Assembly: GCF_963921235.1 (NCBI RefSeq)
Contig: NC_086111.1
Location: 54,870,001 to 54,934,000, forward strand
Direction of reading: 5' to 3'
DNA: 64,000 bases
DNA from: Mobula hypostoma
Taxonomy: Eukaryota
Notes under the pieces: generated by a model
Databases searched by the model: none
Told to the model about the DNA's origin: nothing
What the model saw: only the letters and a program-made list of their open reading frames with translations
Part shown: positions 29,440-58,539 of the stretch, in pieces
Layout of the letters: each line of letters starts with the position of its first letter
Numbering within the stretch: position 1 is the stretch's first letter
Program-made: the position numbers and the translations under genes

Positions 29440-29880
29440 CTCATTGTAGCTCAAACGGAGTTACACCGGAAGTAGTATTTTCAAACATGGCTGCGGTGAA
29501 AGCGCTCTATCGCCCTCTTCGTGAGCGGAAGGAACCGAAGAGAGACCGGATGCGACGATAGAAGGACGGAAAATGGTGTACGTGTCCAACGGTAAGAAGG
29601 AAATATCTCTGGAGTGGTGGAGGATAGATGGGGTTGTGTGTGTGTATGTTTCGGATACAGGCTCGCGGTAATGGTCGGGGTTTAATGGAGTGTTGTGGAT
29701 GTCAATCGGTTGCTCAGTTTTTGCCTGCGGGATCACGCCGATGTTTCCTGCTTGAAGTAAAACATAACCAGGCGCTGCCAGTAGTCATAGTCACGGTACA
29801 AGTTCTACGCACTCCTGCAACATCCACTGGGATTCGAGCTAAAATCCTTTATGTGGAAGGCGGGGGTATGAGGGCTAATT
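29440..29880 (+). promoter_or_regulatory. CpG-island promoter of SELENOK with ETS/GABP and YY1-like sites
   Basis: Local CpG enrichment in CpG-poor surroundings. ACCGGAAGT at 29465-29473 and AACATGGC at 29484-29491. Confidence 0.7.
29573..29591 (+). CDS. SELENOK: Selenoprotein K, coding exon 1 (MVYVSNG)
   Basis: ATG GTG TAC GTG TCC AAC G|gtaag in a CpG-rich promoter. Matches the vertebrate SELENOK N-terminus MVY(I/V)SNG. Confidence 0.96.
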
Positions 29881-32800
29881 TAAAATGTACAAAACATTTA
29901 GGTAATGTCTAAATAGTAAGAATTTAAGATAAACTATACAGCGTAATGTCAATTACTAGGGTAAGTTGACCAAAAATACTTATCTGCACTTTGTTCGGCA
30001 TTTTGTTATTAATTTCACCTTGCACTGCCTCGATGCACTCTGTAATGAATTAATCTGTATGAACAGTTTACAACACAAGCTTTTCACTACCTCTCGGGTT
30101 GATGTAACAATAACAAACCAATTCGATGACACGTTACAAGTTGATCATGGGATCTACTAATTGGACCAAACATTACAAAGCTCGGTTCAACATTTTATCT
30201 TATAGAAGAAAAGTCTTGACTTACAATCAAAACTGAGTGTGTTCAGTGCTTGACAGATGCTAGCAAAGGCCTGGGTTCCAGTCAGAACACTAAAGAATCA
30301 CTGCCTGATGGGCAGGTTGAAGCAAGCATATCGATGCCAGGAAGATGATGGTAACGTCTAATAGGATCTGGGTACAAAGTTCAAGTCATAGGAGAGAACC
30401 CCATTTTTTAAATGGTACTTCAAATACTGTACCTGCAGCTGCTGGCTCACTGGTGCTTAGATCACAACAGAACCTGCAGCGGCATAGTTAAATTTCTGCC
30501 AATGACAGCCAAACTAATGTTATTTGGGGTCATTTTCTGTATTAATGATGGAAAGTGTATTTTCATACCTGTGATTTTTCTAGAATAACCCAATTCTTAA
30601 TTAGAGAAATGGGTAAGTTATCTATAACGAGTAATGTATAATCCTGTAGTATTTTATGATTTTAAGATAACAATTTAGCACATTAAAATTAACCCACAAA
30701 GTTTCAATGAACTTGGATGGCTTAAGACATAGGAGCAGAATTAGGCCATTTGGCCCATCGTCTGCTCCACCATTCAATCATGGCTGATCCTTTTTCCCCC
30801 TCCTCAGCCTCATTGCCCAGCCTTTTCCCCGTAACCTTTGATGCCATATCCAATCAAGAACCTATCAAGCTCTGCCTTAAATACACCCAACAACCTAGCC
30901 TCCATAGCTGCCTGTGGTAATAAAGTCCACAAATTCACCACTCTCTGGCTAAAGAAATTTCTCCACATCTCTATTTTAAATGGACAGTCCTCCATCTTGA
31001 GGCTGTGCTATCTTGTCCTAGACTCCCCCACCATGGGAAACATCCTTTCCACATCTACACTGGGCCTTTCAACATTCAAAAGGTTTCAGTAAGATCCCCA
31101 TTCTCCTCCCACCTCCCCCCCCCATCATCCTTCTAAATTACAGTGAGTACAGACCCAGAGCTATCAAATGTTCCTCATATGATAACCCTTTCATTACCAG
31201 AATCATTCTTGTGAACCTCCTCTGACCCCTCTCCAATGCCAGTGCATCTTTTCTTAGATGAGGAGTCCAAAACTGTTCACAATACTCAAGGTGAGGCCTC
31301 ACCAGTGCCTTATAAAATCTCAGCATCACATCCTTGCTCATGTATTCTAGACCTCTTGAAATGAATGCTAACATTGCATTTGCCTTCCTCTCCACCTACT
31401 CAACCTGCAAGTTAACCTTTAGGGTGTTCTGCACAAGGACTCCCAAGTCTCTGCACATCAGAGTTTTGGGTTTTCTCCCCATTTAGAAAATAGTCCGCAC
31501 GTTTATTTCTACCACCGAAGTGCGTGATAGTGCATTTTCCAATATTGTATTTCATTTGCCACTTTCTTGCCGATTCTCCTAATCTGTCTATGTCCATCTG
31601 CAGTCTACCTGTTTCCTCAACAATACCTGTCCCTCCACTAATCTTCATATCATCTGTAAGCTTGGCAACAAAGCCATCTATTCCATCATCAAATTCATTG
31701 ATATACAGCATAAAAAGAAGCGGTCCCAACACCGACCCCTGCAGAACACCACTAGTCTCTGGCAGCAAACTAGAAAAGGATTCTTATTTCCTACTCACTG
31801 CCACCTACCAATCAGCCAATGCTCCAATCGTGTTAGTAACTTTCCTATAATACCATGGGCACTTAACTTGGTAAGTAGCCTCATGTGTGGCACTTTGTCA
31901 AAGGCCTTCTGAAAATCCAAATATACAACATTCACTGCATCCCTTTTACTTATCCCACTTGTAATCTCCTCAAAGAATTCCAACAGGTTTTCCAGGCAAG
32001 ATTTTCCCTTAAGGAAACTATGCTGACTTTGTACTATCTTGTCCTGTGTCACCAAGTACTCCATAACCTCATCCTTAACAATTGACTCCAACATTTTCCC
32101 AACCACTGAGGTCAGGCTAACTGGTCTATAATTTCCTTTCTGCTGCCTTCCTACTTTCCAGAGTGGAGTGACATTTGCAATTTTCCAGTCCTCTGTCACC
32201 ATGCCGGAGTCCGATGAGTTTTGAAAGATCATTACTAATGCCTCCACAATCTCTACCGCTATCTCTCTTTCAGAACCCTAGGGTGAAGTTCCTCTGCTGT
32301 GGGTGACTTGTGTACCCTTAGGTCTTTCAGCTTTTTGAGCATCTTCTCCCTTGTAATAGTAACTGCACTCACTTTTCTTCCCACACACCCTTTATATCTG
32401 GGATACCGTTAGTGTCTTCCACAGTGAAGACTGTTGCAAAATGCTCATTTACTTCATCTGCCATCTCCTTGTTCTTAGTTATTATTTCTCCGGCCTCATT
32501 TTCTAGTGGTCCTATATCAACTCTCATCTCACTTATTTTTTCATACTTGAAAAAGTTTTTACTGTCCACTTTGATATTGTTTGCTAGCTTGCTTTCATAT
32601 TTCATCATTTCCATCTTAATGATTCTTTTAGTTGCTCTCCGGAGGTGTTTGAAAGCTTGCCAATCCTCTATCTTCCTGCTAATTTTTGCTTTGTTATATG
32701 TTCTCTCTTTTGCTTTTACATTAGCTTTGAATTCCCTTGTCAGCCATGATTGTACTATTTTACCATTTGAGTATTTCTTCATTTTTGAAATACTTCTATC

Positions 32801-32944
32801 CCGCACCTTCTCATTTTTCCCAGAAACTCTCACTATTGCTGCTCTGCTGTCGTCCCTGCCAGCACCTCCTTCCAATTTACTTTGGCCAACTCCTCTCATA
32901 CCTCTCTAATTTCCTTTACTCCACTGAAATACTGCTATGTCAGA

Positions 32945-33825
32945 AAACACAAAATTCTCTGCAGATTCTGGGGTCAAAACAACACTCACAACATGCTGGA
33001 GGAACTCAGCAGGTCGGGCAGCATCCGTGGAAAAGATCGGTCGACGTTTCAGGCCGGAACCCTTCGTCAGGACTGTAGAGGGAAGGGGCAGAGGCCCTAT
33101 AAAGAAGGTGGGGGGAGGGTGGGAAGGAGAAGGCTGGTAGGTTCCAGGTGAAAAACCAGTAAGGGGAAAGATAAAGGGGTGGGGAAGGGGAAGCAGGGAG
33201 GGGATAAGCAGGAAAGGTGAGGAAGGAAAAAGGGTAGTAGAATGGGTAGTAGAAGGAGGCGGAACCATGAGGGAGGTGGTAGGCAGCTGGGGGAGGGGGA
33301 AGAGTAAAACTGGGATAGGGGCAGGGAGAGGCAGGGAATTGCCGAAGTTGGAGAATTGAGTGTTCATACCAAGGGGCTGGAGACTACCCAGAAGGTATAT
33401 GAGGTGTTGTTCCTCCAACCTGAGTTTAGCCTCATCATGGCAGTAGGGGGGGCCATGTATGGACATACCCGAATGGGAATGTGAAGCAGAGTTGAAGTGG
33501 GTGGCAACCGGGAGATCCTGTCTGTTTTGGCGGACAGAGCGGAGGTGCTCGATGAAGCGGTCCCCCAATCTGCGTTGGGTTTCACCGATGTAGAGGAGGC
33601 CACACCAGGAGCACCGGATGCAATAGATGACCCCAACAGACTCTCAAGTGAAGTGTTGCCTCACCTGGAAGACCTGTTTGGGGCCCTGAATGGTGGCAAG
33701 AGAGGAGGTGTAGGGACAGGTGTAGCACTTACACTTACAGGGATAAGTGCCGGGTAGGAGATCCGTGGGGAGGAGTGAGTGGACCAGGGAATTGTGGAGA
33801 GAACGATCCCTGTGGAAAGCAGAGA
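32945..33825 (-). mobile_element. Penelope-like element (GIY-YIG + hammerhead-bearing repeat)
   Basis: GDRFIEHLRSVRQ...LEEQHLIYLLGSLQPLGMN. TSD GCTAT(G/A)TCAGA at 32934-32944 and 33826-33836. Confidence 0.88.
33039..33076 (-). ncRNA. Minimal (Penelope-type) hammerhead ribozyme motif
   Basis: - strand CAGTC CTGACGA A GGGTTCCGGCCT GAAAC GTC GACC. Confidence 0.65.
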
Positions 33826-33855
33826 GCTATATCAGACTTTACTTTCTCCCTACCA

Positions 33856-34142
33856 AAATTTTTTTTTTTCTTTTTGGCGTGTGCCTGCGTGCGTCCGTGA
33901 TGATTTTTTCATGGGTTTTTACAAGGTGCGGAGTGACAGAGAGAGAGACTGTGTGGCTTGCCACTCCTCACACAGACATTTTCACAGTATTTTTCCCTTT
34001 ATTTTACGAGGTCGAGTTGCAATCTCGACACTCAACCGGACACAGATGGAAAGCCTACTCGGGAGCGGACCCGACTGGTTTCAAACCCGGGAACCTCCGC
34101 TCCCGGGTCCGGCGCTGATGTCATTGCGCCACCAGCCAGCCC
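33856..34142 (-). mobile_element. tRNA-derived SINE with TSD
   Basis: Same head and body as the 10003 copy. TSD TCTCCCTACCA at 33845-55 and 34143-53. Poly(A) tail on the - strand. Confidence 0.8.
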
Positions 34143-36079
34143 TCTCCCTACCAGATTTCAAGTTGAACTCAATCATATTGTGATCATTGCCTCCTAAGGG
34201 TTCTTTTACCTTAAGCTCTCTAATCTCCTCTGGTTCATTACATGACACTCAATCCAGTACAGCTGATCCCCGAGTAGGTTCAATGACAAACTGCTCTAAA
34301 AAGTCATCTTGTAGGCATTCAACAAACTCACTGGCATTCAACAAACTCACTTTCTTGAGATCCATTTACAACCTGATTTTCCCCAATCGACCTGCATGTT
34401 AAAATTTCCCATGACTATCATAACATTGGCCTTTTGATACGCCTTTTATATTTCCCGTTGTAATACGTGGTCCACATCCCAGGATCCCAGTTGGGAGGAC
34501 TGTATATAACTGACAACAGGGTCCTTTTGCCCTTGCAGTTTCTTAACTCAGCCCACAAGGATTCAACATCTTCCGATCCAATGTTACATCTTTCTACTGA
34601 TTTGAAGCCATTGTTTACCAGCAGAGCCATGCCACCTGCTCTGCCTATCTTACTATCCTTCTGATACAATGTGTAACCTTGGATATTTAGCCAAAGCCTA
34701 TGGAAAAATGGATTTTGTAACTTGCTTCTGTTGTTCAACATCATCAACCTTGAATGTTGTAGGGAGATCATTTTCACTCAGACAATACCCTCATGAAGGT
34801 AAACTTTTGTGTTCCGTTAAAAAATTGATCGTTAAATTCGTTTATTACATGGTATATTTTTGCCTTGATTATAAAGTACATTTCAATGTTAGCTTTTTTA
34901 AGAAAAATGATTGTCTAGTTCACATTTATAATGTCTACATTTATAATCAGAGTTAGGGGATTTGTGCAAGATTAAGGTCCATGTGATATTAAAATATATG
35001 GAAATTGGTGAAAACAATCTTAAATTTTTTTTAAAAATGCAATTTACATTTTGCTGATCAAACTGTTTGAACTTGTTAGTTTGGGAAGGCAGAGAGAGAA
35101 AAACCACCTGGTCATCTTTGTTATTACCACACTTCAACTTGCTGCTTTAATTTTGTGCTTAAGTTATCAAACAATTAAGACTTTTTAGGCAAAACCAGGC
35201 TAGCGATCTTGTAATGTCAGAACACAAACTAATGGAGCTCTTCCAATCATAGACTGTTTCTTTAGGGGGGGAAAAAAAAAGTAAAGGTACTTTTATAATC
35301 ATTACAAAATAGTACATCTAATTGGTTTGCCATTTATTAGATGTAGGTGATTTTTAGATGGTAAATTATTTCCCATACTTGTGTGCAATGTTAATATATC
35401 ACTGCTTATGCAAGTTTCTAGTACTCTACATGTAGCAATAAACTAAAAATGCGTTTCTGTCCCTGATTTGTCAAGGGGAATCTTCTTCCTGATCTTGCCA
35501 ATATTCGTTGTATTCAGCTGTTACCCACCTTAGTGATTATGTTGATGGAGAAGATTGCAGGTCACAGTGCAAATGACAGTGTTTTTGGAATGGTGCAGTA
35601 TAGATGACTGAAATATGTGCCACTCCAAAGCACAAAAGTTGACCTTTTTTGTGAGCTGCATAGCCTATTAGTATTCAATGTTTTAGAGAGGTACTTCCAA
35701 AATCTTATGCAGCTTCTCGCACTTCCTGCATATGTGTTTTTTTAAATCTTAGAGGCAAGTTTCTGCACTGACTTACATACAGGAATTTTCTTAAGCTCAA
35801 TGCTGGATATGATACTTATATATATTATCAATATTTGTGCACAACCATATTCAAAAGATAATTTTTTGAAAAGGGGTAATTTTGATTAGATGAGGTTTGT
35901 AGCACAGCTTCCTGAAGTGGTCAGAACTATATTCATTACACAATTACAGAATTTGAACTGAGCATTGTATGTTGAGGTGAAAGGGAACCAAAGCATATAA
36001 ATGTTCACTGGAATGTTTCTTCATGGCATTATTGTATACTGACAGTAGTGTTTAAACACTGTACTGCATTCTTTTTCAG

Positions 36080-36170
36080 GTCAAGTTGTGGATAACAGGA
36101 GTCAAGCACCATGGAGCTTATCATCAATTGTTCAGTTTTTCTGGGGAATAGTGGAGTTTATTGCATTTTT
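36080..36170 (+). CDS. SELENOK: Selenoprotein K, coding exon 2 (transmembrane segment)
   Basis: ctttttcag|GTCAAGTT...GCATTTTT|gtaagt, 91 nt. Encodes QVVDNRSQAPWSLSSIVQFFWGIVEFIAFF and is phase-compatible with exons 1 and 3. Confidence 0.96.
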
Positions 36171-36193
36171 GTAAGTATCAATGTGTACTACTA

Positions 36194-36711
36194 AGAAGAG
36201 AAAACCTGCAGATGCTGGAAATCAGAGTCTCTCTCTCAAAATGCTGGAGGAGCTCAGCAGGCCAGGCAGCATCTATTAAAAAAAGTACAGTTGACGTTTC
36301 AGGCCAAAACCCTTTGGCGGAACTGGAGAAAAAAAGCTGAGGAGTAGATTTAAAAGGTGGAGGCAGGGGGAGAGAGAAACACATGTGATAGGTGAAACCT
36401 GGAGAGGGAGGGATGAAGTGAAGAACTGGGAAGTTGATTGTCTCCCTCGCCCCCTCTGGTGCCCCTCTCCACTTTTTCTTTCTTCCATGGCCTTGCTCTT
36501 TCACCAGCTTCCGGGCTCTTTATATCATCCCTCCCTCTCCAGGTTTCACTCATCACCTGTGTTTCTCTCCCCCCCGCCACCCGCCTTTTAAATCTACTCA
36601 GCCTTTTTTCTCCAGTCCTGCCAAAAGGTTTCAGCCTGAAACGTCGACTATACTTTTTTTCCGTAGATGCTGCCTGGCCTGCTAAGTTCCTCCAGAATTT
36701 TGTGTGTGTTG
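36194..36711. mobile_element. Inverted pair of Penelope terminal-repeat fragments in SELENOK intron 2
   Basis: Left arm on -, right arm on +. 13-bp TSD ATGTGTACTACTA at 36181-93 and 36712-24. Confidence 0.85.
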
Positions 36712-36780
36712 ATGTGTACTACTATTTCTTTCTTAAAAAATGCAGAATCTCTACTGAAAATATTTTTGTTTTACATATAG

Positions 36781-36867
36781 CTTTCGAACATTGTTCAATC
36801 CATCTGGAACTGACTACAAAACATCTAGAAGTCAGACGTCCTGGGGTAGACCAGATGATGGAAGAGG
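36781..36867 (+). CDS. SELENOK: Selenoprotein K, coding exon 3
   Basis: ttacatatag|CTTTCGA...GGAAGAGG|gtaatt, 87 nt. Encodes FRTLFNPSGTDYKTSRSQTSWGRPDDGRG, including the conserved DDGRG. Confidence 0.93.
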
Positions 36868-38317
36868 GTAATTCTAAGCTAAAATAGAGAATGTTTTTTT
36901 TATTTCATTGATCTCTTGAATCTTTCCTTACACGTACTTTACTGAAAATGGAAGTTGATAAGGAGTTTATTCCATGGCTCTGTGTGGCCTCTGATAAAAA
37001 GCAAAGCTTCTTATTGCAAGGCAAAAGAAACTCAGAAGTTATCAGAGCAGTGGTATTGAGAGCAACCAGTGGATTAATGGATTTTATTTCAGAGAACAAG
37101 AAAACTAAATGCAACATTTCCATTCGGATGCTGGGAAAATGAGCTCCCTAGTACCCTGGCTGTTAAATAATTTATATCATAAATATATCCAGGGTGGGCA
37201 ATGATACAAAGCTAGATTTGCAATGCAGGTTGTAAGGAAGAGCTTTGAGGTATCTAAAGTAAGCGAGCGTGGATGTGGCAGGCACAATACGTTGCGGGAA
37301 AACATAAAATTGTCCACTTTGATAGGAAAGATTTTTTTTTAATATATAAAAAAAGGGTTCAGAGGGACCTGCATATCCTTGTACAGGAATTGTTGCAACT
37401 GCTTTGGACTTCACTACCAGTACAAAAAATGCTTACTGTGATAATAGGATTTTGATCAACTTGCATCTAGAATGCCATGTCTGATATCCTTAATTTTTGA
37501 CATATTAGTGATGTCTGATCTTGAAGGCTGGTTATAACTGCAATAAAGCAGTGCACTGAAGGTTCAGCAGTTACTCTTTGGAGATGGGAGGTGGTGGCGG
37601 CTGGGTCTTCCTGAGAGGTGGGATGAAACACACTGGGCCTTTATGTTCTTTTGTTAAGAACAAGAGTTGATCATATTGAAACATTCAAAATTCTCATGAG
37701 GCTTGAAGATAGATGGAAAAATAATTTTAAGGGTGTCCTGAATCAGAGATCACAAACTCAAACTAAGGGGTGTTATTTCCAGACTGAGATGAGGAGAAAT
37801 TTCTTCGAGGTTTGAAAAGACTGAGATACTGAATTTATTTAAGATAATTGTGGATATTATGGAAATGTGGTTAGTGTAGAAAAGTGAAGCTCAGAGATAC
37901 AAGATCAGACATAATCTTGTTAAATGGTGAAGCAACATGAGGGACTGAATAGTCCACTTTTATTTCCAGTACAAAATTTGCATTTGTTAAACACTGGTTT
38001 CAGGAACCCTCAATAACATTTCTTCCTGTCTGAAAACTTTCAAGCAAGTATCAAAATGATGCAGTAAGTGTCACTCATAATCTACTTTCTTCTGTCAGTA
38101 TACTGCTTGAAATAGATTAAAGTTGAGGATGGAAGTAGGAATAAACATTTGTGTTAAAGTGGGTTAGTAAAAGGAACCTTAAAATACACTGTTACAAATA
38201 AGCTTTAATATTTTAGGTTGTTTGTTAGAAATTGTGCAGTATGATTTCAGATTATGTATTGATATTGTATCCTATTATTTCTATTTTCATTTTGTAAAAC
38301 AATTAATTTTTTTAAAG

Positions 38318-38404
38318 GCCGCCTGGAGCTCCACGGAGAAGAATGGGTCGAATAAATCATGGAGGAGGTCCGGCACCACCTCCAATGTCTGGAGGATGAG
38401 GAAG
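38318..38404 (+). CDS. SELENOK: Selenoprotein K, coding exon 4 with Sec codon (TGA 38397-38399)
   Basis: tttaaag|GCCGCCT...GGA GGA TGA GGA AG|gtacgc. Encodes PPGAPRRRMGRINHGGGPAPPPMSGGUG, the G/P-rich SELENOK tail. Confidence 0.96.
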
Positions 38405-39240
38405 GTACGCAAGTAGTGGTTGCAAACAGGAATTTGTTGGTATTGTGTTACTCCATGGCTGCAAGGGTGCACCATTACTGAAAATAATGATTACTTCATC
38501 AGCAACTTCTAAATCAGTTATCTTTGTCCTCCTGGGTGGGTTTAAGGAAACAAGTGCTTGGGAATTCATTTTGTCAAGATTTGTAAATAGCCCTTCAGCA
38601 ATATAGGTTGTAGCATAGCAGAATTGTTGAACTGCTGCAGATATTGAAGATATTGGCTGCTTTACTGCCAGCTCCACAGTGGCAATTAGGGATGGACAGA
38701 TTTTAGCTCTGCCAGTATCACTCTCATATAACAAACAAATTAATACTATTAACATTACAAACTTTGTTTTTAACTTGCTCTTCTTTACTCTGTTATCTGT
38801 CTTGTGCAATATTTGATAGCCATGCATTATGGCAGGCTTAAGCAGACTATAAATCAATGTTTTGCTGCACGCAAGCAAAAGGATAATTAAATCAACAGAG
38901 CGAGTATCACAAATGGTCATTGTCCTTATTCACATAAGTGCTTATGGTATTTATTTTGCAATCTTTTAAGAGGTGCTCATTTGCTTATTAAACTTATATT
39001 CTTGACCATCAATTTACAGGTGTTGGTTTGTAGTGTAATCAGTTAAATAGTTGGATTTAATATTTATCTTAGTCGTCATGTTGTTCTACTTATTACTGTG
39101 ACTGAACTGAGGAAATTCAAGGCCTAAACTACTGTTCAATAGCAGTATGAGAATCTTGGTGTTCAATAATTATACAATGGAATAGGTTTTTGAAAGAATT
39201 TAGGGGTAAAAAGTGACATTTTTGTAAAACCTCTTTACAG

Positions 39241-39244
39241 GTAA
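39241..39244 (+). CDS. SELENOK: Selenoprotein K, last coding exon (completes Arg codon, then TAA)
   Basis: ctctttacag|G TAA gives the C-terminus GGUGR*. Total CDS 19+91+87+87+4 = 288 nt = 95 aa plus stop. Confidence 0.93.
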
Positions 39245-39382
39245 ATGCCTGCTTTCCAAAGCAGGCACCGGCTCATGCATTCACCGTGATGTGAGAAGAT
39301 TGGAAGAAACTGGAACTGTCAAGTTTTACTAATATGAAGGGGTGAATGCACTCGTCCATGCAGAAGTGTTGCCCTCTGTTAA

Positions 39383-39456
39383 ATGCAGCGGATAATGATG
39401 TTGTGCCAGGAATACCTGAATTCAAAGGTTCTGGCACAATGGAAATGCAACTGCAT
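39383..39456 (+). promoter_or_regulatory. SECIS element (type II) in SELENOK 3'UTR
   Basis: Helix I ATGCAG (39383-88) / CTGCAT (39451-56). Core ATGAT (39395-99) / GGAA (39441-44). Helix II GTTGTGCCAG / CTGGCACAAT. Unpaired AA at 39411-12. Apical mini-stem ACCT/AGGT. Confidence 0.95.
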
Positions 39457-39544
39457 GGTATCTCAAAAAAGATTTCAAGTATTTTCAGACTTGTATTTGA
39501 ATTGTCTTATATTGAACTGAACTGCTGTTCTTTGTCTTTCCATT

Positions 39545-39550
39545 AATAAA
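39545..39550 (+). terminator. Polyadenylation signal of SELENOK
   Basis: AATAAA about 90 nt downstream of the SECIS. Confidence 0.75.
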
Positions 39551-39884
39551 GTATTTAAAGTGTTGGCCTACAATAGTGTGCTAAAGATTAATACATTAAT
39601 ATTTTTATTAGCTACACTTGTGAAACCTGTTATGCTCAATAGCCTCCCTAAAGAAAAGGCAGATAAATTCCCATAAGTAAAATACAACTGCCTAACAATT
39701 AATGTAGTTTAACAAAAAATAAACACCAGAATGTACGCATGTACATACGAGTGTGTATATATAGGAGATACAATTGAAACGCAAATGCACTTACCATATA
39801 TCACTTCCAGGACTACCAACTCTTATAGTGCATACACGTTTCTGTGGTGTTTCACAGACAGCAACGCAAGCCCTTTGTCCCACA

Positions 39885-42800
39885 AGAACAGAAGAAATTA
39901 TGAACAGGAATAGGCCACCAGGTACCTCAAGCCTGCACTGCTAGTCATTATATTAATGGCTTTTCTATGCTGGCATCAACTCCCCTTTTGTGCCAGTTCT
40001 CTAATGTTATTTACCTGTGTAAAAATATGTTTAATGAACTGCTTCCACCATCCTCTAGCTGAGAATTCCAAAGATTCACTATCCTGAGGAAAGAAATTCT
40101 ATGTATCTCAATTTTAAATGACCAGCTCCTTGTTTGCCACTCCCCCACTAATGGAAACATCTCAACAGCTACCCAATGAAATGTTCTCATCTTTGAATAA
40201 GATAGCACCTCAAATCTCAAAGAGTACAGACCTAAACTATCCAGTGTCTCTGTGTTGGATATCCCAGGAATTAGCCTGATGAATCTCCTTCAAATTTCTT
40301 CTAGTAATACTATATCCTTTCTCAAAATAACTGCACAATATTCCAGGAGTGGCTTCATCTACATCTTGTACAACTTAAAGCCCAACTCTGCTATTTAGCT
40401 TATTATCTACTGATTAGGCCTGCTTGCAGATATTTAGATTCATACACACTAGAACAGATATATTTCTGGACTTTACACTTGTGCACTCTGCCTTTTCAAT
40501 AATGACCTGCTTTTTGATTTCTATTACCAAAGTCCTTGACCTCCCAATTCCCACATTAAACATCATTTGCCAGGTATTTCTGTAACCTATTGCTCAGTCA
40601 CAGTGTCCTCATCATAACATGTCCATAAGACCTAGGAGCAGAATTAGGCCATTCCATCATGGTTGATGTATTATCCCTCTCAATCTCATTTTCCTGCCTT
40701 TTCCCTGTAATCTCTGATGCCCTGATTAATCAAGGACTGATCAACCTCAGTCTTAAGTATATCCAATGACTTGACCTGAACAGCATCTGTGGCAAAGAAT
40801 TCCACAGATTCAGCACCCTATGGCTCAAGAAATTTTTCGTCATCTGTTCTAAATGGATATCCCTCAATTCTGAGGCTGTGTCCTCTGGTCCTAGTCTCAC
40901 CCACTATAGGAAAAATCCTCTCCACATATACTCTATCCAGACCCTTCAATATTTGATAGGTTCAAATGAGATTCTCCCCCCACCGCCCCACCATTCTTCT
41001 AAACTCCAACAAGTACATGCCCAGAGCCATCAAACATTCCTCATACATTAACCCTTTCATTCCTGGGATCATGCTCGTGAACCTCCTCTGGACTCTCCGG
41101 AATGCCAGCATATACTTTTTTAGATAATGGACCCAAAACTGCTCACAATACTCAAGTTCAGTCTGACCAATGCCTTATAAAGGTTCAGTACTATCCTTGC
41201 TTTTATATTCTAGTCCTCTCAAAATGAATGCTAACATTGCATTTGCCTTCCTTACCACCAAATCAACCTGCAAGTTAGCCTTTAGGGAATCCTGCATGAG
41301 AACTCCCAAGTCTTGCGGCATCTCCGAGTTTTGAATTTCTCCCTGCTTAGAAAATAGTATGGGCCTTTTATCCTCCTGTCAAAGCACATGACCGTGCACT
41401 TCCCTACATTATATTCCATCTGCCACTTCTTTGCCCATTCCCCCAATCTATCTAAATCCTGCAGACGCACTGCTTCCTCAAAACTGCCTGCCTCTCCATT
41501 TAGCTTCATTATCGTCCGCAAACTTGGCCATAAAGCCATCAATTCCTTCATCAAAATCATTGGCATACAGCACAAAAAGAAGTCTTCCCAACACAAACCC
41601 CTGCAACACACCACTAGTCACCAGCGCCTAACCAGAAAAGGGCCCCATACTTGAAATTAGCCCAGAATAGGCAGTTCCGGCCCTTCAGCCATGCCACCCA
41701 GCGACCCCCAATTTAACCCTAGCCTTACACAGGACGATTTACATTGACCAATTAACCTACCCTCCAGTACATCTTTGGACTGTGGGAGGAAACCCACGCA
41801 GTCAAGGGGAGAACGTACAAATTCCTTACAAGCCTCAGTGGGAGTTGAACCCACATCACTGGTACTGTAAAGTGTTGTGCTAACCACTATGCTACCATGC
41901 TATTCCTGGTATTGTTTGAATAAGCTATTTGAATATCAACTATTGTTCATTGACTGACTTGTCATTATTTTCCCAGCCCACCTTAGACAAATCCACCTTC
42001 ATACCATTCTAGTTTCCCTTATCTAAATTAAAGATAGTGGTTTTGGTTCTTGGTGTTCTCCCTCAGGTTACATCTTAATTATTACAGTTGTGGTCATTAC
42101 TTCCTAGCTGTGGATAACCTATTAGATCTCTTATTAATCCTTATTCACTGCACATGTTCAAATCTAAAGTAGCTTATTCCTGGGAAGATTTCATAACACA
42201 CTGCTCAAAAAGGAATCCCTAACACTGTACACAAAATCTTCCATGATTCTCTTGCCAGTACGATTCATTCAAATAATATGCACATTAAAATTTCACATAA
42301 CAATTGCAATTCTTTTTCCCCCATTTATGCTCTGCCCGATCAAGAGGTTACATTTTGAGGGCTCACAAAGTATTCCCACCTGATTGTTCTTTTCTCTGCT
42401 ATTCATGGGTTCAACCCAAACCAATTTTACATTATTATCCACTGCCTCTATATCACAACTCAACACACACAAAATACTGGAGGAACTCAGCAGGCCAGAC
42501 AGCATCTATGGAAAAAAGTACAGTTGACATTTCAGGCCAAGACCTTTTAGCAGGTTGCTTGGATTTCCAGCATCTGCAGATTTTCGCGTGTTTGCGATGT
42601 CACAACTCAATTTATTTTGATACCTTCCTTGATTAACAACAATATCCTGTCACCTTTTCCTTTGGTCTGTTACTTTGGAACACTGTATAACTTGGAATAT
42701 TGAGTATCTATTTTTGGTAACTGTGCAACCAAGTCTCTGCAAAACCTTTTAGATCATACTGTAAACTATCTTACTGCAAATCTGCTTGTATTCAAATAAA
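39885..42800 (-). mobile_element. Old CR1 with nested younger CR1 (about 40625-41650), V-SINE-like element (about 41660-41900) and Penelope fragment (42464-42599)
   Basis: RLQDLDRLGEWAKKWQMEYNVGKC motif, SINE head TAGCATAGTGGTTAGCAC on -, and TSD TCACAACTCAA around the Penelope piece. Confidence 0.7.
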
Positions 42801-46719: not shown

Positions 46720-47190
46720 GCATACGCTAGGCACGGCGATAGAGAAGAATTAGCACCACAAAATACGTACGGGCGGAGAACAGCCGGCAGAAGCTATGTC
46801 TGAGACACACTCTGACAGGAAGCTACACGGACACAGAGGCTGTAGGACATACGGAGACAGGAAACGCTCGGTGGGGAAGGCACACTCGCCGAAAAACAGT
46901 CCCAACATTTTCGGGGAGACCTGGTAGTCCTTACCCAGACCTGGTCGTGAAAAAAAAAAATGACGCAAGTGGAACCGGACAACGGCAAAGAAAAAGAGAA
47001 GGAAAAGGAAAAGGAGCAACGCGGGGTGAAGCGGCCGATCGTCCCCGCCGCCATCCCAGAGTCCGTACTCGAGGTGAGTGCAAGTCGGCAAACCTGGTCC
47101 TCAATCATTCTGAGCCTTAACCATCCTCACTCTTGTCTCTAACTGACCCCGAGACACTCAGAACCGTAGCCTTCTAGGCCCCGTAACCAA
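46720..47190 (+). promoter_or_regulatory. CpG-island promoter / first exon region of ACTR8
   Basis: Dense CpGs around the ATG at 46960. Confidence 0.7.
46960..47073 (+). CDS. ACTR8: Actin-related protein 8 (INO80 subunit), coding exon 1
   Basis: MTQVEPDNGKEKEKEKEKEQRGVKRPIVPAAIPESVLE|gtgagt. Matches the ACTR8 N-terminus (EKEQRGVKRPIVP). Confidence 0.95.
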
Positions 47191-47268
47191 CCTGACTCAC
47201 TGCATCTTACGTTCCCTTCCCCTGCTTCCTAGTCTTTTTTTTCTCGCTTCTAAAGTTACTTCTTACCT

Positions 47269-47479
47269 CATCAAAGTTGCTGGTGAACGCAGCAGGCCAG
47301 GCAGCATCTCTAGGAAGAGGTACAGTCGACGTTTCAGGCCGAGACCCTTCATCAGGACTAACTGAAGGAAGAGTTATTAAGAGATTCCTAGAGATGCTGC
47401 CTGGCCTGCTGCGTTCACCAGCAACTTTGATGTGTGTTGCTTGAATTTCCAGCATCTGCAGAATTCCTCGTGTTTGCGG
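47269..47479. mobile_element. Palindromic Penelope-derived mini-element in ACTR8 intron 1
   Basis: 12-bp TSD TACTTCTTACCT at 47257-68 and 47480-91. Perfect 48-bp inverted repeat at 47269-47316 / 47385-47432. Confidence 0.88.
47322..47362 (-). ncRNA. Minimal (Penelope-type) hammerhead ribozyme motif
   Basis: - strand AGTC CTGATGA A GGGTCTCGGCCT GAAAC GTC GACT: intact CUGANGA/GAAA core, stem I AGTC/GACT, palindromic ACGT stem III. Confidence 0.7.
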
Positions 47480-48491
47480 TACTTCTTACCTGTTAGTTTT
47501 CAGTCCTGTCATTAGTAATTCTTTCCTCTCTTCAGGATAGCGTTGTGGTAACATATGAAGAGGCAGTTTGAGTTTTTTTTATTGGTTATCTTCTCTCTGC
47601 CAATCTCAGGTGCTTGCCCTCTGTGGGTTTGATTGCCAACTTCAAAGTGAGTGTTGCACAATTGAAAACAGACCGTGCTACTTCTGAGCACTTATTAAAG
47701 GAAACTTTAGAAGAATTTGCACATGATTGAGACTGAATATAGAGAAGCAGCGCTGTCCATCATAAGGAAGATGATTGTGATTATTGGAGGTTAATCTCAG
47801 CCTTGGAACACTGCTGAAGCAGTTTCTTTGAGCAGTATCCTAATTTCACACATTTTCAGCTGAGATCCACATAATTACAAGCTGAGAAAGAGAAATATTT
47901 GTATAACATTGGATAGTTTTTCCCAGTTGTTGCTCTTCAAATAATTTCAGGCTTTTCTGCAGCAACTAATGTAAACGGATAAGTGGCAAACAGCAGTTTT
48001 GGATTTCCTAAGGGTGTTTAATAAGATACCACATATAAATTGATTACTAATAATAATTTGCATGGATGGCAGATTAAATTAACAAACACACGGCAAAAAG
48101 TACGGATAAAATGTTCATTATCAGTTTGATAAGTGTAACCTACTTGGATAGCTCAGGGATTATTGCTGGGGCTTCAGCCATTTTCAATCTTTTATTCTGC
48201 TACTCTTACTGGCAGTTCTGGTCCACAGAAGTAAAAGCAAATCTTGAAAGAGTGTGGAGAAAATTTACAAGGATGTTGCTAGGATTTGAGGACCTGAGTC
48301 ATCGGGAAAGGTTGAATAGATTAAGACTTTATTTCCTGGAGCACAGGAAATGAGGGAAAATCTTATAGTGGTGTACAAAACAATGATGGGTTTAGATAGA
48401 ATAAATACATGCCTTTTCTCTAAAGTTGTATTTCACCTTTTCTCTGAGATTGAGTGAGACTACAACTAGAATCACAGGTTTAGGTTGAAAG

Positions 48492-49865
48492 GTTCAAAGT
48501 AAATTTATTATCAAAGTACATATGTCACCATATACAAACCTGAGATTCATTTTCTTGTGGACATTCTCAATAAATCCAATGACCATAATAGGATCAATGA
48601 AAGACCTCACCAACTGGACGTACAACCAGTATGCAATAGACAATAAATGGCAAATACAAAAAGGAAGAAATAATAATAATAAATATATTAGCAATTAATA
48701 TCCAGAACATAAATTGAAGAGGGAGGCCTTGAAAGTGAGTCCATAGGTTGTGGGAACATTTCAGTATTGGTTCAGGAGCCCAATAATTGAGGGATAATAA
48801 CTTTTCCTGAACCTGGTGGTGTGAGTCCTGAGGCTCCTGTACCTTCTGCCTGATGACAGCAGCAAGAAGAGAGAATAACCTGGGTAGTGAGGGTCCTTGA
48901 TGATGGAAGTTGCTTTCCTGCACCAACACTCCATGTAGATGTGCTCAATGGTGGGGAGGTCTTTACCAAGATAGACTGGGCCATATCCAATACTTTGTGT
49001 AGGATTTTCCATTCAAGGGCATTGATGTTTCCATACCAGGCTGTGATGCAGCCAGTTAATATACTCAGCACTGCAAATCTATAGAAGCTTGTCGAAGTTT
49101 TAGGTGTCACGCTGGATCTTCACAAACTCCTAAGAAGTAGAGGCACTACCATGCTTTCTTCATAATTGCACTTGTGTGCTGGGTCCAGATAGGTCCTTTG
49201 AAATGATAACACCGAGGTACTTAAAGTTGCTGATCCTCTTCATCTCTGATCCTCTGATGAGGACTGGCTCTGGACCTCTGGTTTCCTCCTCCTGAAGTCA
49301 ATAATTAGCTCCTTAGTCTTGCAGATCTTGAGTGAGAAGTTGTTGTTGTGGCACCACTGAGCCAGATTTTCAAATTCCTTCCAATATGCTGGTTTGTCAC
49401 CATCTTTGATTCGGCCGAGAATAGTGGTGTCATCAGCAAACTTAAATATGGCATTGGAGCTGAGCTTAGCCACTGATTCATAAATGGAAAGCAAGTAGAG
49501 CAGAGGACTAAGCACACAGCCTTGTGGTGCACCTACACCAACAGAGATTGTGGAGTAGGCGTTGTTGCCAATCCAAACTGACTGGGGTCTACAAGTGAAG
49601 AAATTGAAGATCCAATTGCACAAGGAACTGTTGAAGCCAAAGTCTTAACGCTTATTGATAATATTGAATGCCAAGCTGTAATTGATAAAGAGCATCCTGA
49701 TGTATGCATCTTTGCTGTCCAGATGTTCCAGGGTGGAGTGAAGAGCCAATGAGATGGCACCTGCTGTGGACCTGTTGTGCCAGTAGGCAAATTGGAGCAG
49801 ATCCTAGTTGCTTCTCAGGCAGGAGTTGGTATATTTCATCACCACCCTCTCAAATCACTTCGTCA
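48492..49865 (-). mobile_element. Rex/Babar-type LINE RT/3' part
   Basis: [13 protein letters not shown]...FKFADDTT...[11 protein letters not shown]; ILTGCITAWYGN; SGRRYRSLRTHTTRFRKS. Confidence 0.88.
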
Positions 49866-50135
49866 CTTTCAGAACAGAAGTGCGAAGAAATTTTTTTAGT
49901 CAGAGGGTGGTGAATCTATGGAATTTGTTGCCACGGGCAGCAGTGGAGGCCAAGTCATTGGGTGTATTTAAGGCAGAGATTGATAGGCATCTGAGTAGCC
50001 AGGGCATCAAAGGTTATGGTGAGAAGGTGGGGGAGTGGGACTAAATGGGAGAATGGATCAGCTCATGATAAAATGGCGGAGCAGACTCGATGGGCCGAAT
50101 GGCTGACTTCTGCTCCTTCGTCTTATGGTCTTATG
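49866..50135 (+). mobile_element. Short CR1 3' end
   Basis: FRTEVRRNFFSQRVVNLWN...GYGEKVGEWD, near-identical to the 3' end of the 18464-21716 copy. Confidence 0.85.
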
Positions 50136-51434
50136 AGATAAGTGCTTCTGAACGATAGTCATTGAGGCAGGTGAAATATTTATGGAGAACCTGAGGGGGA
50201 ACTTCCTCACTCAGGGTGGTGAGAATGGGGAATGATCTGCCAGTGGAGATGGTTGATGCAGGTTCAATTACAACATTTAAGAGAAGCTTGGATCAGTATC
50301 TGGATGAGAAGGGTATGGAGGGCTTTGATCTAGGTACAGGTAGATGGAACTAGTCAGAAATACAGGTCAACACAGACTAGATGGGCTGAACAGTCAGTTT
50401 CTGTACTCTATGACTGTATGAACTAAAAAGGAATCAGGTGCAATATATTCAGGTTTGCTAAAAAGATAAAGGCAGTGAAGTAGGATATGTGAAGGGCATA
50501 CAGTCTTAAAAAGGATATAAATGGGTTAAGTGAGCGGCAAAAAGGGGACATGTAGAGTGGGAAAGTTTGAGGATATCCATCCTGGTAAAAAGAAAAGAAG
50601 CAAGATTTACTTGGATAAAGTGAGATGACATCCCTGTATGAAATAGACTATGCTCGTGCCTCGGTACAGCACAGAATGAAAAATACAGATGGGATGTTGG
50701 TCTTTACATGGAGGGTGGAGTATAATGATGGATGAGTCTTGCTGCATTGCCATCACCAAGTCTTCCACAGCAGCATCCCATGGGTCACCACTGACCAGAA
50801 CTCAGCTTGTACACTGTTGCCTACAGCATGAGGCTGTACATGACTTATTGTCGACCTGATGTGTGAGAATGTCATTCTACGCCTAACTGTGTGTGGCTCT
50901 AACAGCACTCAACAAGTTCCACATTACCTAAGAGGAAATTTTTCACTTGATTGAAGCTCTGAGCATCCATTTTATGTACCACTAGTACCATGCACCATCA
51001 TATCATGCTGAATATGTAAATATTCAGGCTAATTCAACAGCATCTCCAAAACCCATTAGCTCAGTCATCTCACAAACACAAGAGATTCTGCAAATGGTGT
51101 AAGTCCAGAGTAACACCTACAAAATGCAGGAGGAACTCAGCCTGTCAGGCAGCATCTATGGAAAGGAATAAAGAGTCGACAGTTCAGGCCAAGACCCAAG
51201 GAGAAGCAAGCATCTGGGAATGGCTCCAATTATAGATTCCTTCTCAGTAGCATACTTATCCTAACTTGAAAATGCATTACAGTACTGCTTTTAATAGTTA
51301 GATAAAAGTCTTTGTTATTCCAAGAAACAGCAGTGCGAGAGCACAAGAACTGCAGTGGTTGAAAAGAAGTTTAGGAATGGTCATTAAATTCCAATCTTGA
51401 CAAAGACACCTGCATCCCGGAAATAGAATAGGAG

Positions 51435-52105
51435 TTGGTTTATTATTGTCACATGTACCAAGGTATAGTGAAAAGCTTGTCTTGCATACCGATCACACAG
51501 ATCAATTCATTACACAGACCATTGAGGTAGTACAAGGCAAAACTATAACAGAATGTAGAATAAAGTGCAACAGCTAAGAGAAAGTGCAATGCAGATAAAC
51601 TACAAGGTGCAAAATTATAACAAGATAGACTGTGAGATCGACAGTTCATTTATCTTACTTGAGAACTGTTCAATAGTCTTTCAACAGCAGGGTAGAAGCT
51701 GTCTTTGAGCCTAGTGGTCCATGCTTTCAGGCTTTTATATCTTCTGCCTAACAATAGAGAGGAGAAGAGAAACTGTCTGGGAGTGGGTGGGGTTTTTAAT
51801 TATGCTGGCTGCTATACTGGGGTATATACAGAGTCTATAGATGGAAGGCTGGTGTGTGTGATGTAAATGCAGTTCAAAAATAACTCTGAAGTGTGTTACA
51901 GTCACAGGGAGACCAGTTCCCATACCAATCTCTAATGCATCCAGGTAGGATGTCTTCTGTGGTTCATCAATAACAATTAGTAAAGGTTGATGAGGACATG
52001 CAAAATTTCTTTAGCCTCCTGACATGTTGGTGAGCTTCCTTGACTGTGGCATCTATGCAGTTGGTCCAGGGTAGCCTGCTGTTAATGTTCATCCCTAGGA
52101 ACTAA
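51435..52105 (-). mobile_element. Degraded Rex/Babar-type LINE 3' end
   Basis: Same 3'UTR family as 21850-22457 and 28720-29140. Confidence 0.6.
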
Positions 52106-52613
52106 AAGGCCCTACCCTAATACTGGCTATTCTTATCAACTGTGGTCTGTTGGTCAAGAAGAAAATTCCCAAGTAATATGAGATGAGTATTGTCCTGAAA
52201 ATTGAGTTAAAGAAAGATAATTAGTGGTGATACAAACAGAAGACAATCTGCAGATGCTGAAAAATCCAAAGCAACACACACAGAATGCTGGAGGAACTCA
52301 GCAGGTCAGGAAGAATCAATGGAAAAGAGTAAACAGTCAATGTTTCGGGCTGATATCCTTCTTAATGGAGATATGTTTAATCTCTTTCTGTTGGACTTTC
52401 TGTCAGGAAAGTAGAAGCAGAAAATAAATGTGCAAAAAGTAGCAAAAATTCTGTGGTAAAGCACTTTATCTTTGGATCAATAAGTGTTTAGAATAATTAA
52501 CCTGCTAAGTTTAGGGGACTGGAAGATTGACCTCCTATGTTTACTTTTCATTTATTAAGTTTCTTGAACATTATCTTATTATGGATTGTAAACTGAAATT
52601 TTATGCTTTGAAG

Positions 52614-52784
52614 CCGATCCAGAGCAACTTCATTGTGGTTATTCACCCTGGATCATCCACTCTGAGGATTGGCCGAGCTGCTGATACACTCCCTATTGGT
52701 GTACCTCACATCATCGCCCGAAGACATAAACAACAAGGACAGCCTCGATATGAGGACCCATGGCTTCAAAGGGATGGTCTCAAT
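52614..52784 (+). CDS. ACTR8: ACTR8 coding exon 2
   Basis: tttgaag|CCG...CTCAAT|gtaagc, 171 nt. Encodes PIQSNFIVVIHPGSSTLRIGRAADTLP...RDGLN. Confidence 0.95.
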
Positions 52785-52838
52785 GTAAGCTTTTTTTGTT
52801 TTATCCTTTTATAGTGATGGGGATTCGGTCATTTAATC

Positions 52839-53435
52839 CATTGGTCCCCAACCACCGGGCCGCAAAGCATGTGCTACCGGGCCGCAAGGAAATGATATGA
52901 TTTGGCGATATGAAAAAATATGAGTCAGCTGCACCTTTCCTCATTCCCTGTCACGCCCACTGTTGGAACTTGAACGCACGCGAGGTCATTACATAAGGAA
53001 CCCCCTTCGAGTACTGCATCGCTGTCTCCCATCACCCTTCGGTGGGACCGTCTTGTTGCAGGGAAACAAGCTCAGGGCTCCCACTGATTCAGCCATATTG
53101 GTGTGTTGCAATGATTTTATATGTTCATATGGGGAAAGTATGTGCTGTGTGTTTAATAGCCAAACGTTACTTAAAATGTTATAATGCTATTGACAGTGAA
53201 TAGTGACTTAGAATTGACTTATCACTATATTCATGCAAGGAAAATATGTGGTGTGTTTAATATTAAATTCATTAGATAAACCCTTTTAGAAACGAAATTG
53301 AGTGTATTAGCCACTTGTAAGTGACTTATAGTTGACTTATCACCTTATTCCGGTCATGATTAAGACCCTCACCTGCCCGCCCCCCCCCCCCCCCGGTCGG
53401 CCGGTCCGCGGTGCAAAAAAGGTTGGGGACCCCTG
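52839..53435. mobile_element. hAT-Charlie (MER1-like) non-autonomous DNA transposon
   Basis: TIRs CATTGGTCCCCAACC / GGTTGGGGACCCCTG. 8-bp TSD ATTTAATC at 52831-38 and 53436-43. Confidence 0.9.
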
Positions 53436-58090: not shown

Positions 58091-58539
58091 TCACAAAACA
58101 TTGAGGGAATAAGAATAGTGGTGTGCATGCAAAGGGGCTTAAAGAGAATGTCAACGAATGAGTAGACAACAATGTGCAGATGGAGTAAAATGTGGAAAAG
58201 TTTAAGGTCATCCAAATACTGAGTATTTTTACATGGCAAGAGTTAGGAAATTATGATATTCCAAAGAGCTGGATGTCCTTGAGCAGGTAATTAGAAAGCC
58301 AAACGGTTTGTTAGTCCTACTGTGTGAGAATTTGAGTATAAGAATAAAGGTGTCTTACTACGATTATGTAGGACACATAATTGATGAGATCACAGTATAC
58401 AATTCTTGAAAAAGGACGTACTCGCTACTGAGGCAAGGGTGAATCTAGTGCAGCTTTTACATTGCAACTCATCCTATTGATGCAATTTTGCCCTATCTCA
58501 CTACACATTGTCTCTGTCGTAAATCAGCTACCACATCTT

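What the first reader, a model, noticed from the sequence alone, without database searches (positions are those of the whole stretch)
29573..39550. Complete selenoprotein K gene with UGA recoding, missed by the ORF track
Seen: five phase-compatible exons splice to MVYVSNGQVVDNRSQAPWSLSSIVQFFWGIVEFIAFFFRTLFNPSGTDYKTSRSQTSWGRPDDGRGPPGAPRRRMGRINHGGGPAPPPMSGG-U-GR*, with TGA as codon 93 and a canonical SECIS about 140 nt after the TAA. Established: SELENOK has Sec three residues from the C-terminus, and the SECIS recruits SECISBP2/eEFSec. Automated pipelines often truncate such genes at the UGA. This is known biology, but it is the main hidden system in the window.
Basis: partly seen in the sequence, partly recalled or inferred. 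Interest (0 to 1): 0.7.

Follow-up and report, generated by a model that had tools for sequence, protein, structure and literature searches.

The report
Selenoprotein K gene of a shark-like fish
This is an intact, expressed selenoprotein K (SELENOK) gene of a cartilaginous fish, with its in-frame UGA selenocysteine codon and SECIS hairpin; the call is correct, but this is ordinary, well-known biology.

Summary
TGA is codon 93 (38397-38399) and TAA lies at 39242-39244.

- **Protein:** the 92 residues before the TGA match Pfam SelK_SelG end to end (91.5 bits). The best database hits are shark SELENOK (85-74% identity).
- **Splicing:** intron-less transcript contigs from three organisms carry junctions 2-3, 3-4 and 4-5 exactly. 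The exon 1-2 junction is supported only indirectly.
- **SECIS:** a type-2 SECIS lies at 39374-39466 (AUGA 39395, AA 39411, GA 39442).
  - It keeps its helices through compensatory changes in shark, chimaera, cattle and bird.
  - A covariance model built without the window hits only this site in 64 kb (E 7e-16).
  - Rfam found no SECIS, but it also missed the bovine SELENOK SECIS.
- **Synteny:** ACTR8 follows on the same strand, as in cattle, bird and teleost.

Verdict: an orthologue of a known vertebrate selenoprotein, of low interest.

Side notes: the "SelK proximal stem-loop" after the stop codon is conserved across jawed vertebrates, and elasmobranchs share a 24-codon uORF. The scan's index holds only a sister note on this same window (s1-144749), nothing on other DNA.

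The parts
29487..29561 (+). Candidate 24-codon upstream ORF in the 5' leader (ATG at -86, TAG 12 nt before the main ATG). The transcription start is unknown, so this is tentative.
   Evidence: A uORF of the same position and length occurs in Heptranchias and Stegostoma but not in Callorhinchus, bird or teleost. It may instead be a conserved promoter motif.
29573..29591 (+). Exon 1 coding part (MVYVSN + first base of Gly7), with donor G|GTAAGA.
   Evidence: The same ATGGTGTACGTGTC.AA.G|GT sequence sits at the annotated gene start in five orthologous loci. The junction itself was not covered by contigs.
36080..36170 (+). Exon 2, encoding residues 7-37 (N-terminal part and most of the transmembrane helix).
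   Evidence: On its own it passes Pfam SelK_SelG (27.5 bits against a cut-off of 23.3). Spliced contigs begin or break exactly at 36079/36080 and join 36170 to 36781.
36781..36867 (+). Exon 3, encoding residues 37-66.
   Evidence: Joints 36170>36781 and 36866>38317 (GT..AG, cut +1) appear in contigs of runs X2, X3 and X21.
38318..38404 (+). Exon 4, encoding residues 66-94 and holding the Sec codon.
   Evidence: It matches Pfam profile positions 66-86 of 86. The joint 38402>39239 (GT..AG, cut +2) appears in all four runs.
38397..38399 (+). In-frame TGA, the selenocysteine codon 93. It lies 5 nt before the last exon junction.
   Evidence: TGAGGAAG|GT is identical in all six orthologous loci. Database orthologues end at ...MSGG, just before it.
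39241..39244 (+). First 4 nt of exon 5, which complete Arg95 and give the TAA stop (39242-39244). The whole 3'UTR lies in this last exon.
   Evidence: GTAAA is invariant in seven species. This layout is described for SelK in PMC3316567.
39247..39266 (+). Proximal stem-loop (PSL) starting 2 nt after the stop: GCCUGCUU(U)/(A)AAGCAGGC.
   Evidence: The stem forms in the minimum-free-energy fold of all seven species. It is an 8-bp helix, 94.6% paired, with 3 pairs showing compensatory change. It equals the 'SelK PSL' of PMC6844570, whose function is unknown.
39374..39466 (+). Type-2 SECIS element: AUGA 39395-39398, 12-bp helix II, unpaired AA 39411-39412, 4-bp mini-stem, GA 39442-39443.
   Evidence: Fold. 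RNAalifold and pair counts give 92% paired, with 7 of 15 pairs compensatory. Model R1, built without the window, gives 76.2 bits, E 6.7e-16, and is the only hit in the window. The pattern scan finds it as a unique site.
39545..39550 (+). Proximal AATAAA polyadenylation signal. Conservation with Heptranchias ends here.
   Evidence: However, organism A contigs run on about 900 nt past 39750, so a longer 3'UTR form probably exists.

Best explanation
The stretch is the functional SELENOK (selenoprotein K) orthologue of a cartilaginous fish.

**Gene and product.** Five exons are spliced into an mRNA encoding a 95-residue protein. It has one hydrophobic helix (about residues 20-42) and a Gly/Pro/Arg-rich tail, and it ends in Sec93-Gly-Arg.

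**How it works (inferred).** UGA93 is read as selenocysteine because a type-2 SECIS hairpin lies in the 3'UTR, 159 nt downstream in the mRNA. By established knowledge of eukaryotic Sec decoding, the SECIS recruits SECISBP2, eEFSec and Sec-tRNA. The UGA lies only 5 nt before the last exon junction, so failed recoding should give a protein three residues shorter rather than trigger nonsense-mediated decay.

**Shown here:** exon structure, homology, splicing of exons 2-5, conservation of the SECIS sequence and structure, and synteny.

**Inferred:** Sec insertion, SECIS-factor binding and membrane topology.
For: - **Reading frame:** exact exons and frame.
- **Family:** Pfam SelK_SelG full length, 91.5 bits, E 5e-26; exon 2 alone passes the cut-off.
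- **Homologues:** the best are annotated shark and chimaera SELENOK, 85-74% identity, E down to 8.5e-48.
- **Gene structure:** identical exon boundaries in Heptranchias. Exon 1 and its donor are conserved in five loci.
- **Recoding context:** TGA-GGA-AG|G-TAA is invariant in all orthologous loci.
- **Expression:** intron-less contigs from runs of three organisms show joints 36170>36781, 36867>38318 and 38404>39241 with GT..AG. There are 0 mismatches in organism A, and introns are almost uncovered there.
- **SECIS:**
  - Canonical AUGA / 12-bp helix / AA / mini-stem / GA.
  - 92% paired against 29-40% in slid controls, with 7 of 15 pairs compensatory.
  - A model built from 5 orthologues without the window gives a single window hit, E 6.7e-16.
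  - Unique in the pattern scan.
- **Synteny:** ACTR8 exons lie downstream on the same strand, as in cattle, bird and teleost loci.
- **Literature:**
  - SelK is present in all vertebrates (PMC3316567).
  - The SelK SECIS is type II (PMC6844570).
Against: - Rfam found no SECIS family, either at gathering score or at E<=10. The same search also misses the bovine SELENOK SECIS, so this says little.
- The exon 1 to exon 2 junction was not observed. Exon 1 lay outside the single read laying stretch, and the k-mer search for exon 1 was weak (0.5 of words in X6, 0.2 or less elsewhere).
- The runs are only guessed to be RNA.
- No protein-level evidence of selenium incorporation exists here.
- The 3' end is uncertain: contigs read past the proximal AATAAA.
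Confidence: 0.95

Rival explanations
1. The gene is real, but UGA93 acts mainly or only as a stop. The product would then be a 92-residue protein without Sec, and the hairpin would be a 3'UTR structure with another role.
For: Termination always competes with Sec insertion, and only three residues are lost. Rfam gave no SECIS call. No selenium data are available.
Against: - The two codons and the stop after the TGA are invariant from chimaera to cattle.
- The hairpin keeps every SECIS hallmark and covaries.
- The Rfam negative fails its own positive control.
Confidence: 0.03
2. It is a decaying or silent copy (pseudogene), and the functional SELENOK lies elsewhere in the genome.
For: SelK has many pseudogenes in mammals (PMC3316567). 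The exact product is not in the protein collection.
Against: - Mammalian SelK pseudogenes are processed copies, whereas this one has all four introns with GT..AG borders.
- It has an intact frame.
- Transcript contigs match it without mismatch.
- It lies in conserved synteny with ACTR8.
Confidence: 0.015
3. The exons are a chance assembly of open frames, and the hairpin is a chance match.
For: None beyond the shortness of the exons (19-91 nt).
Against: E 8.5e-48 to shark SELENOK, spliced contigs and a unique SECIS hit.
Confidence: 0.005

Closest known systems
Annotated chondrichthyan SELENOK (Chiloscyllium punctatum isoform X2, Heptranchias perlo, Pristiophorus japonicus, Callorhinchus milii)
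   Same: - 85, 82, 81 and 74% protein identity.
- The same exon boundaries.
- A 3'UTR 74% identical to Heptranchias over 388 nt, including the PSL and SECIS.
- The same uORF in Heptranchias and Stegostoma.
   Different: - It is identical to none of them, so the window comes from another cartilaginous-fish species.
- It has one Gly fewer in the HGGGG run.
- Intron 1 is 6.5 kb and holds LINE remnants.
- Intron 4 starts GTAC rather than GTAA, so here only the spliced mRNA gives Arg-stop.
Mammalian and avian SELENOK (SelK)
   Same: - The Pfam family, with Sec third from the C-terminus.
- Invariant TGAGGAAG|GTAAA, with the whole 3'UTR in the last exon (PMC3316567).
- A type-2 SECIS (PMC6844570).
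- A proximal stem-loop.
- ACTR8 downstream.
   Different: - Only about 58-60% protein identity.
- SECIS and PSL stems differ by compensatory substitutions.
- No uORF at -86 in the bird locus.
SELENOS (selenoprotein S)
   Same: It works alike: a small ER-membrane protein with a disordered tail, Sec near the C-terminus, a type-2 SECIS and a proximal 3'UTR stem-loop (PMC6844570).
   Different: It belongs to a different family with no sequence match. The SelS PSL encloses a splice site and is followed by a SPUR element; neither has been found for SelK (PMC6844570).

Membership tests
SELENOK (Pfam PF10961 SelK_SelG) | Sequence match to the family profile above the curated cut-off | tested here: met
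   91.5 bits against a cut-off of 23.3, residues 2-92 on profile positions 1-86 of 86. Exon 2 alone scores 27.5 bits.
SELENOK (Pfam PF10961 SelK_SelG) | One N-terminal hydrophobic (transmembrane) segment followed by a Gly/Pro-rich tail | tested here: met
   The highest Kyte-Doolittle 19-residue window is residues 20-38, mean 1.81. G+P+R+S make up 65% of residues 45-92. This is a simple hydropathy measure only; topology was not tested.
SELENOK (Pfam PF10961 SelK_SelG) | In-frame UGA at the orthologous Sec position, third residue from the C-terminus, with conservation continuing past it | tested here: met
   TGA is codon 93 of 95. TGA-GGA-AG|G-TAA is identical in six orthologous loci.
SELENOK (Pfam PF10961 SelK_SelG) | Orthologous gene structure and synteny (five exons, ACTR8 downstream on the same strand) | tested here: met
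   Exon boundaries match Heptranchias. ACTR8 exons lie at 46972-61152 on the + strand. An actin-family gene follows SELENOK in cattle, bird and teleost loci.
SELENOK (Pfam PF10961 SelK_SelG) | Transcribed and spliced as predicted | tested here: met
   Junctions 2-3, 3-4 and 4-5 appear in intron-less contigs of three organisms. Junction 1-2 is inconclusive: contigs break exactly at the exon 2 acceptor, and exon 1 words are only partly found.
SELENOK (Pfam PF10961 SelK_SelG) | Selenium actually incorporated at UGA | not testable with these tools
   Needs 75Se labelling or mass spectrometry.
Eukaryotic SECIS element, type 2 | AUGA...GA non-Watson-Crick core at the base of helix II | tested here: met
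   AUGA 39395-39398 faces GA 39442-43. AAUGA and GA are invariant in six species.
Eukaryotic SECIS element, type 2 | Helix II of about 12 bp, then unpaired AA, then a further mini-stem (form 2) | tested here: met
   12 bp, AA at 39411-12 and a 4-bp mini-stem. The structure was predicted independently by RNAalifold. 92.2% of cells are paired, and 7 pairs show compensatory change.
Eukaryotic SECIS element, type 2 | Recognised by a curated SECIS covariance model (Rfam SECIS families) | tested here: not met
   No SECIS hit at gathering score or at E<=10. The control, the bovine SELENOK SECIS, is missed as well. An own model built from orthologues hits at E 6.7e-16. SECISearch3 is not available here.
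Eukaryotic SECIS element, type 2 | Binds SECISBP2 and supports UGA recoding | not testable with these tools
   Needs a binding or reporter assay.

The most novel reading that the evidence does not exclude
The module straddling the last exon junction may be a functional cis-element rather than a passive 3'UTR feature.

The module consists of:
- the invariant UGA-GGA-AG|G-UAA-A(Y) sequence, which after splicing re-creates a good 5' splice site, AAG|GUAAAU;
- immediately after it, the proximal stem-loop.

The stem-loop keeps its 8-bp stem through compensatory changes in sharks, chimaera, a teleost, a bird and cattle. It might mask the regenerated splice site, or it might tune termination against Sec insertion at a UGA two codons from the stop. 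The PSL's function is stated to be unknown in PMC6844570.

An elasmobranch-specific 24-codon uORF may add translational control.
Probability: 0.25. Interest if true: 0.4.

Novelty: already known. Interest (0 to 1): 0.1.

Why it matters
The main value is annotation quality. SELENOK belongs to the selenoprotein set found in all vertebrates (PMC3316567). It is one of the C-terminal-Sec families that pipelines commonly cut at the UGA or mis-splice (PMC12822975; see P0006). A correct gene model for this genome is therefore useful but not surprising.

The small added value is comparative. The SECIS and the function-unknown SelK proximal stem-loop are both conserved in structure across jawed vertebrates.

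Tried and rejected
- **Rfam.** A scan of the whole window at gathering score and of 39200-39620 at E<=10 found no SECIS family. The best hit was a spurious SNORD45 match over the SECIS. I rejected this as evidence against a SECIS, because the same search misses the bovine SELENOK SECIS.
- **First SECIS scanner.** My first strict version missed the orthologues, which have mismatches in helix II. I relaxed it. It still missed Stegostoma and the teleost, which were found by BLAST and by the covariance model.
- **The look-up of encoding contigs.** No record was found for P0001, P0007 or P0017. One look-up and one run search did not complete and were repeated.
- **Exon 1 expression.** The k-mer search was weak: 10 sampled words, with 0.5 of them in X6 at best.
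- **Howard et al. 2005 (SRE paper).** It is not held in the library. Whether SelK was among its predicted UGA-adjacent structures could not be checked.
- **Upstream synteny.** Comparison with the upstream flanks of the orthologous loci gave only shared transposon matches.
- **Helix I of the SECIS.** It could not be put in one register across sharks and amniotes, so it was left out of the model.
- **Not run.** No structure prediction, complex prediction or further large protein search was needed.
Full report
**Observation.** The window contains only A, C, G and T, with no N runs.

Exact borders were derived from the sequence:

| Exon | Coordinates | Flanks |
|---|---|---|
| 1 (coding part) | 29573-29591 | donor G\|GTAAGA |
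| 2 | 36080-36170 | ttttcag\| ... \|GTAAGT |
| 3 | 36781-36867 | atatag\| ... \|GTAATT |
| 4 | 38318-38404 | ttaaag\| ... \|GTACGC |
| 5 | from 39241 | tttacag\|GTAAAT |

The phases fit. TGA is codon 93 (38397-38399), followed by Gly, Arg and TAA (39242-39244).

**What the protein is.**
- Exon 2 alone passes the Pfam SelK_SelG cut-off, and exon 4 aligns to the end of the profile.
- The 92 residues before the TGA match the profile end to end at 91.5 bits.
- A search of 5.8 billion clusters returned 29 hits with E<=0.001. All carry PF10961, and nearly all of those that carry a source name are named selenoprotein K.
- The best hits are Chiloscyllium 85%, Heptranchias 82%, Pristiophorus 81%, Stegostoma 80% and Callorhinchus 74%. 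Tetrapods and teleosts score about 53-67%.

The window is therefore from a cartilaginous fish that is none of those species.

The stored orthologues end at ...MSGG, exactly where the window has TGA. One GenBank model, P0006, avoids the TGA by a frame jump and then reads the 3'UTR. This illustrates the annotation problem described in PMC12822975.

The protein has one strongly hydrophobic stretch (residues 20-38, Kyte-Doolittle 1.81) and a Gly/Pro/Arg/Ser-rich tail.

**Gene structure and synteny.**
- Heptranchias perlo (L001) has the same exon boundaries.
- Exon 1, with its donor, is conserved at the annotated gene start in five orthologous loci.
- TGAGGAAG|GT at the end of exon 4 and GTAAA at the start of exon 5 are invariant from chimaera and teleost to bird and cattle. 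Conservation thus runs through and past the UGA, as expected for a recoded codon.
- ACTR8 exons lie downstream on the same strand at 46972-47076, 52617-52790, 60567-60680 and 61027-61152. This is the arrangement seen in the cattle, bird and teleost loci.

**Expression and splicing.** The 3'UTR is held completely by four runs of one organism (A) and partly by runs of others. I laid contigs of four runs on 35800-39750.
- In organism A, contigs of 1557 and 1608 nt join 36867 to 38318 and 38404 to 39241. One also joins 36170 to 36781. They carry no mismatch.
- A 699-nt contig of organism I carries exons 2-5.
- A contig of organism B carries exon 2, exon 3 and 632 nt further upstream.
- All joints are GT..AG.
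- In organism A most intronic bins have depth 0-3 against 50-80 on exons, so these runs behave as RNA although they are only guessed to be.

Contigs break exactly at the exon 2 acceptor, and the word search for exon 1 was weak.

Organism A contigs continue about 900 nt beyond 39750 and stop at a repeat. A 3'UTR longer than the one ending at the proximal AATAAA (39545) therefore probably exists.

**SECIS.** Folding 39370-39465 gives the canonical form 2:
- AUGA at 39395-39398 faces GA at 39442-39443.
- Helix II has 12 bp.
- AA at 39411-39412 is unpaired.
- A 4-bp mini-stem follows.

The core lies 150 nt after the TAA, and 159 nt after the UGA in the mRNA.

Rfam reported no SECIS family, either at gathering score or at E<=10. 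The same search also misses the bovine SELENOK SECIS, so that negative is uninformative.

Comparative tests replaced it:
- The element aligns with those of Heptranchias, Callorhinchus, Stegostoma, Bos mutus and a bird. AAUGA, GGAA and GA are invariant.
- RNAalifold predicts helix II and the mini-stem independently, with 7 of 15 pairs showing compensatory change.
- 92.2% of cells are paired, against 29-40% when the partner is slid.
- A covariance model built from the five orthologues without the window gives a single hit in both strands of the 64-kb window. It lies at 39374-39466 with 76.2 bits and E 6.7e-16. The model also finds the teleost element.
- A simple pattern scan finds no other site with at least 11 of 12 helix-II pairs.

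**Mechanism.** By established knowledge, the SECIS recruits SECISBP2 and eEFSec with Sec-tRNA to decode UGA93. This is inferred, not shown.

The UGA lies 5 nt before the last junction. [quoted passage not shown]

SelK occurs in all vertebrates and belongs to the ancestral selenoproteome. Its whole 3'UTR lies in the last exon (PMC3316567).

**Side observations.**
1. Two nucleotides after the stop lies a hairpin (39247-39266). It corresponds to the 'SelK PSL' of PMC6844570, whose function is unknown.
   - It forms in the minimum-free-energy fold of all seven species.
   - It keeps 94.6% pairing, with three compensatory pairs.
2. Splicing re-creates AAG|GUAAAU just before that hairpin. This is the sister note s1-144749. 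The sequence is invariant, but no contig shows its use.
3. A 24-codon uORF at -86 is shared by the window, Heptranchias and Stegostoma.
4. Intron 1 holds antisense LINE reverse-transcriptase fragments.
5. Intron 2 is mostly a roughly 200-nt-armed inverted repeat of an abundant element.

**Verdict.** This is an orthologue of a well-known gene, so novelty is nil and interest is low.

Noticed in passing
window 39247-39266 (and L001 10945-10964, L002, L003, L004, L005, L006 7127-7146): The proximal stem-loop right after the SELENOK stop codon is conserved in structure across shark, chimaera, teleost, bird and cattle. The stem is 8 bp, 94.6% paired, with 3 compensatory pairs. It equals the 'SelK PSL' of PMC6844570, whose function is unknown.
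   Followed up: partly
window 38400-38404 + 39241-39246: Splicing of intron 4 re-creates a consensus-like 5' splice site, AAG|GUAAAU, over the stop codon (sister note s1-144749). The sequence is invariant in 7 species. In most other species the intron also starts GTAA, so intron retention would give the same Arg-stop; in the window it starts GTAC. No contig shows re-splicing.
   Followed up: partly
window 29487-29561: A 24-codon uORF (MAAVKALYRPLRERKEPKRDRMRR) starts at -86 and ends 12 nt before the SELENOK ATG. A uORF of the same position and length occurs in Heptranchias and Stegostoma, but not in Callorhinchus, bird or teleost. It may instead reflect a conserved promoter motif (AACATGGC), since the transcription start is unknown.
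   Followed up: partly
window 31412-32244 (- strand), within intron 1: Two broken reverse-transcriptase ORF fragments (Pfam RVT_1, 47.6 and 31.7 bits) of an antisense non-LTR retroelement. They probably account for the composition shifts at 30500-34000 and part of the 6.5-kb length of intron 1.
   Followed up: partly
window 36237-36702 (intron 2): Most of the 610-nt intron 2 is an inverted repeat with arms of about 200 nt, 83-88% complementary. It is made of a very abundant element: summed contig depth reaches up to about 100,000 in transcriptome runs. The pre-mRNA could form a long hairpin here.
   Followed up: partly
window 39566-40651: Transcript contigs of organism A run about 900 nt past 39750, beyond the proximal AATAAA (39545), and stop at a repeat near 40651. 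Further signals are AATAAA at 39718 and ATTAAA at 40555. This suggests a long 3'UTR isoform or read-through.
   Followed up: no
window 46972-61152 (+ strand): ACTR8 orthologue exons (46972-47076, 52617-52790, 60567-60680, 61027-61152) lie downstream of SELENOK, in conserved vertebrate synteny.
   Followed up: partly
L006 7254-7343 (Aldrovandia affinis): The teleost SELENOK SECIS found by the model (46 bits) has CUGA instead of AUGA at the core.
   Followed up: no
P0006 (Chiloscyllium punctatum, GenBank hypothetical protein): This public gene model bypasses the Sec TGA by a frame jump inside exon 4 and then translates the 3'UTR (…GRGPPGDEEGKRLLSKAGG…). It is a concrete example of selenoprotein misannotation.
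   Followed up: partly
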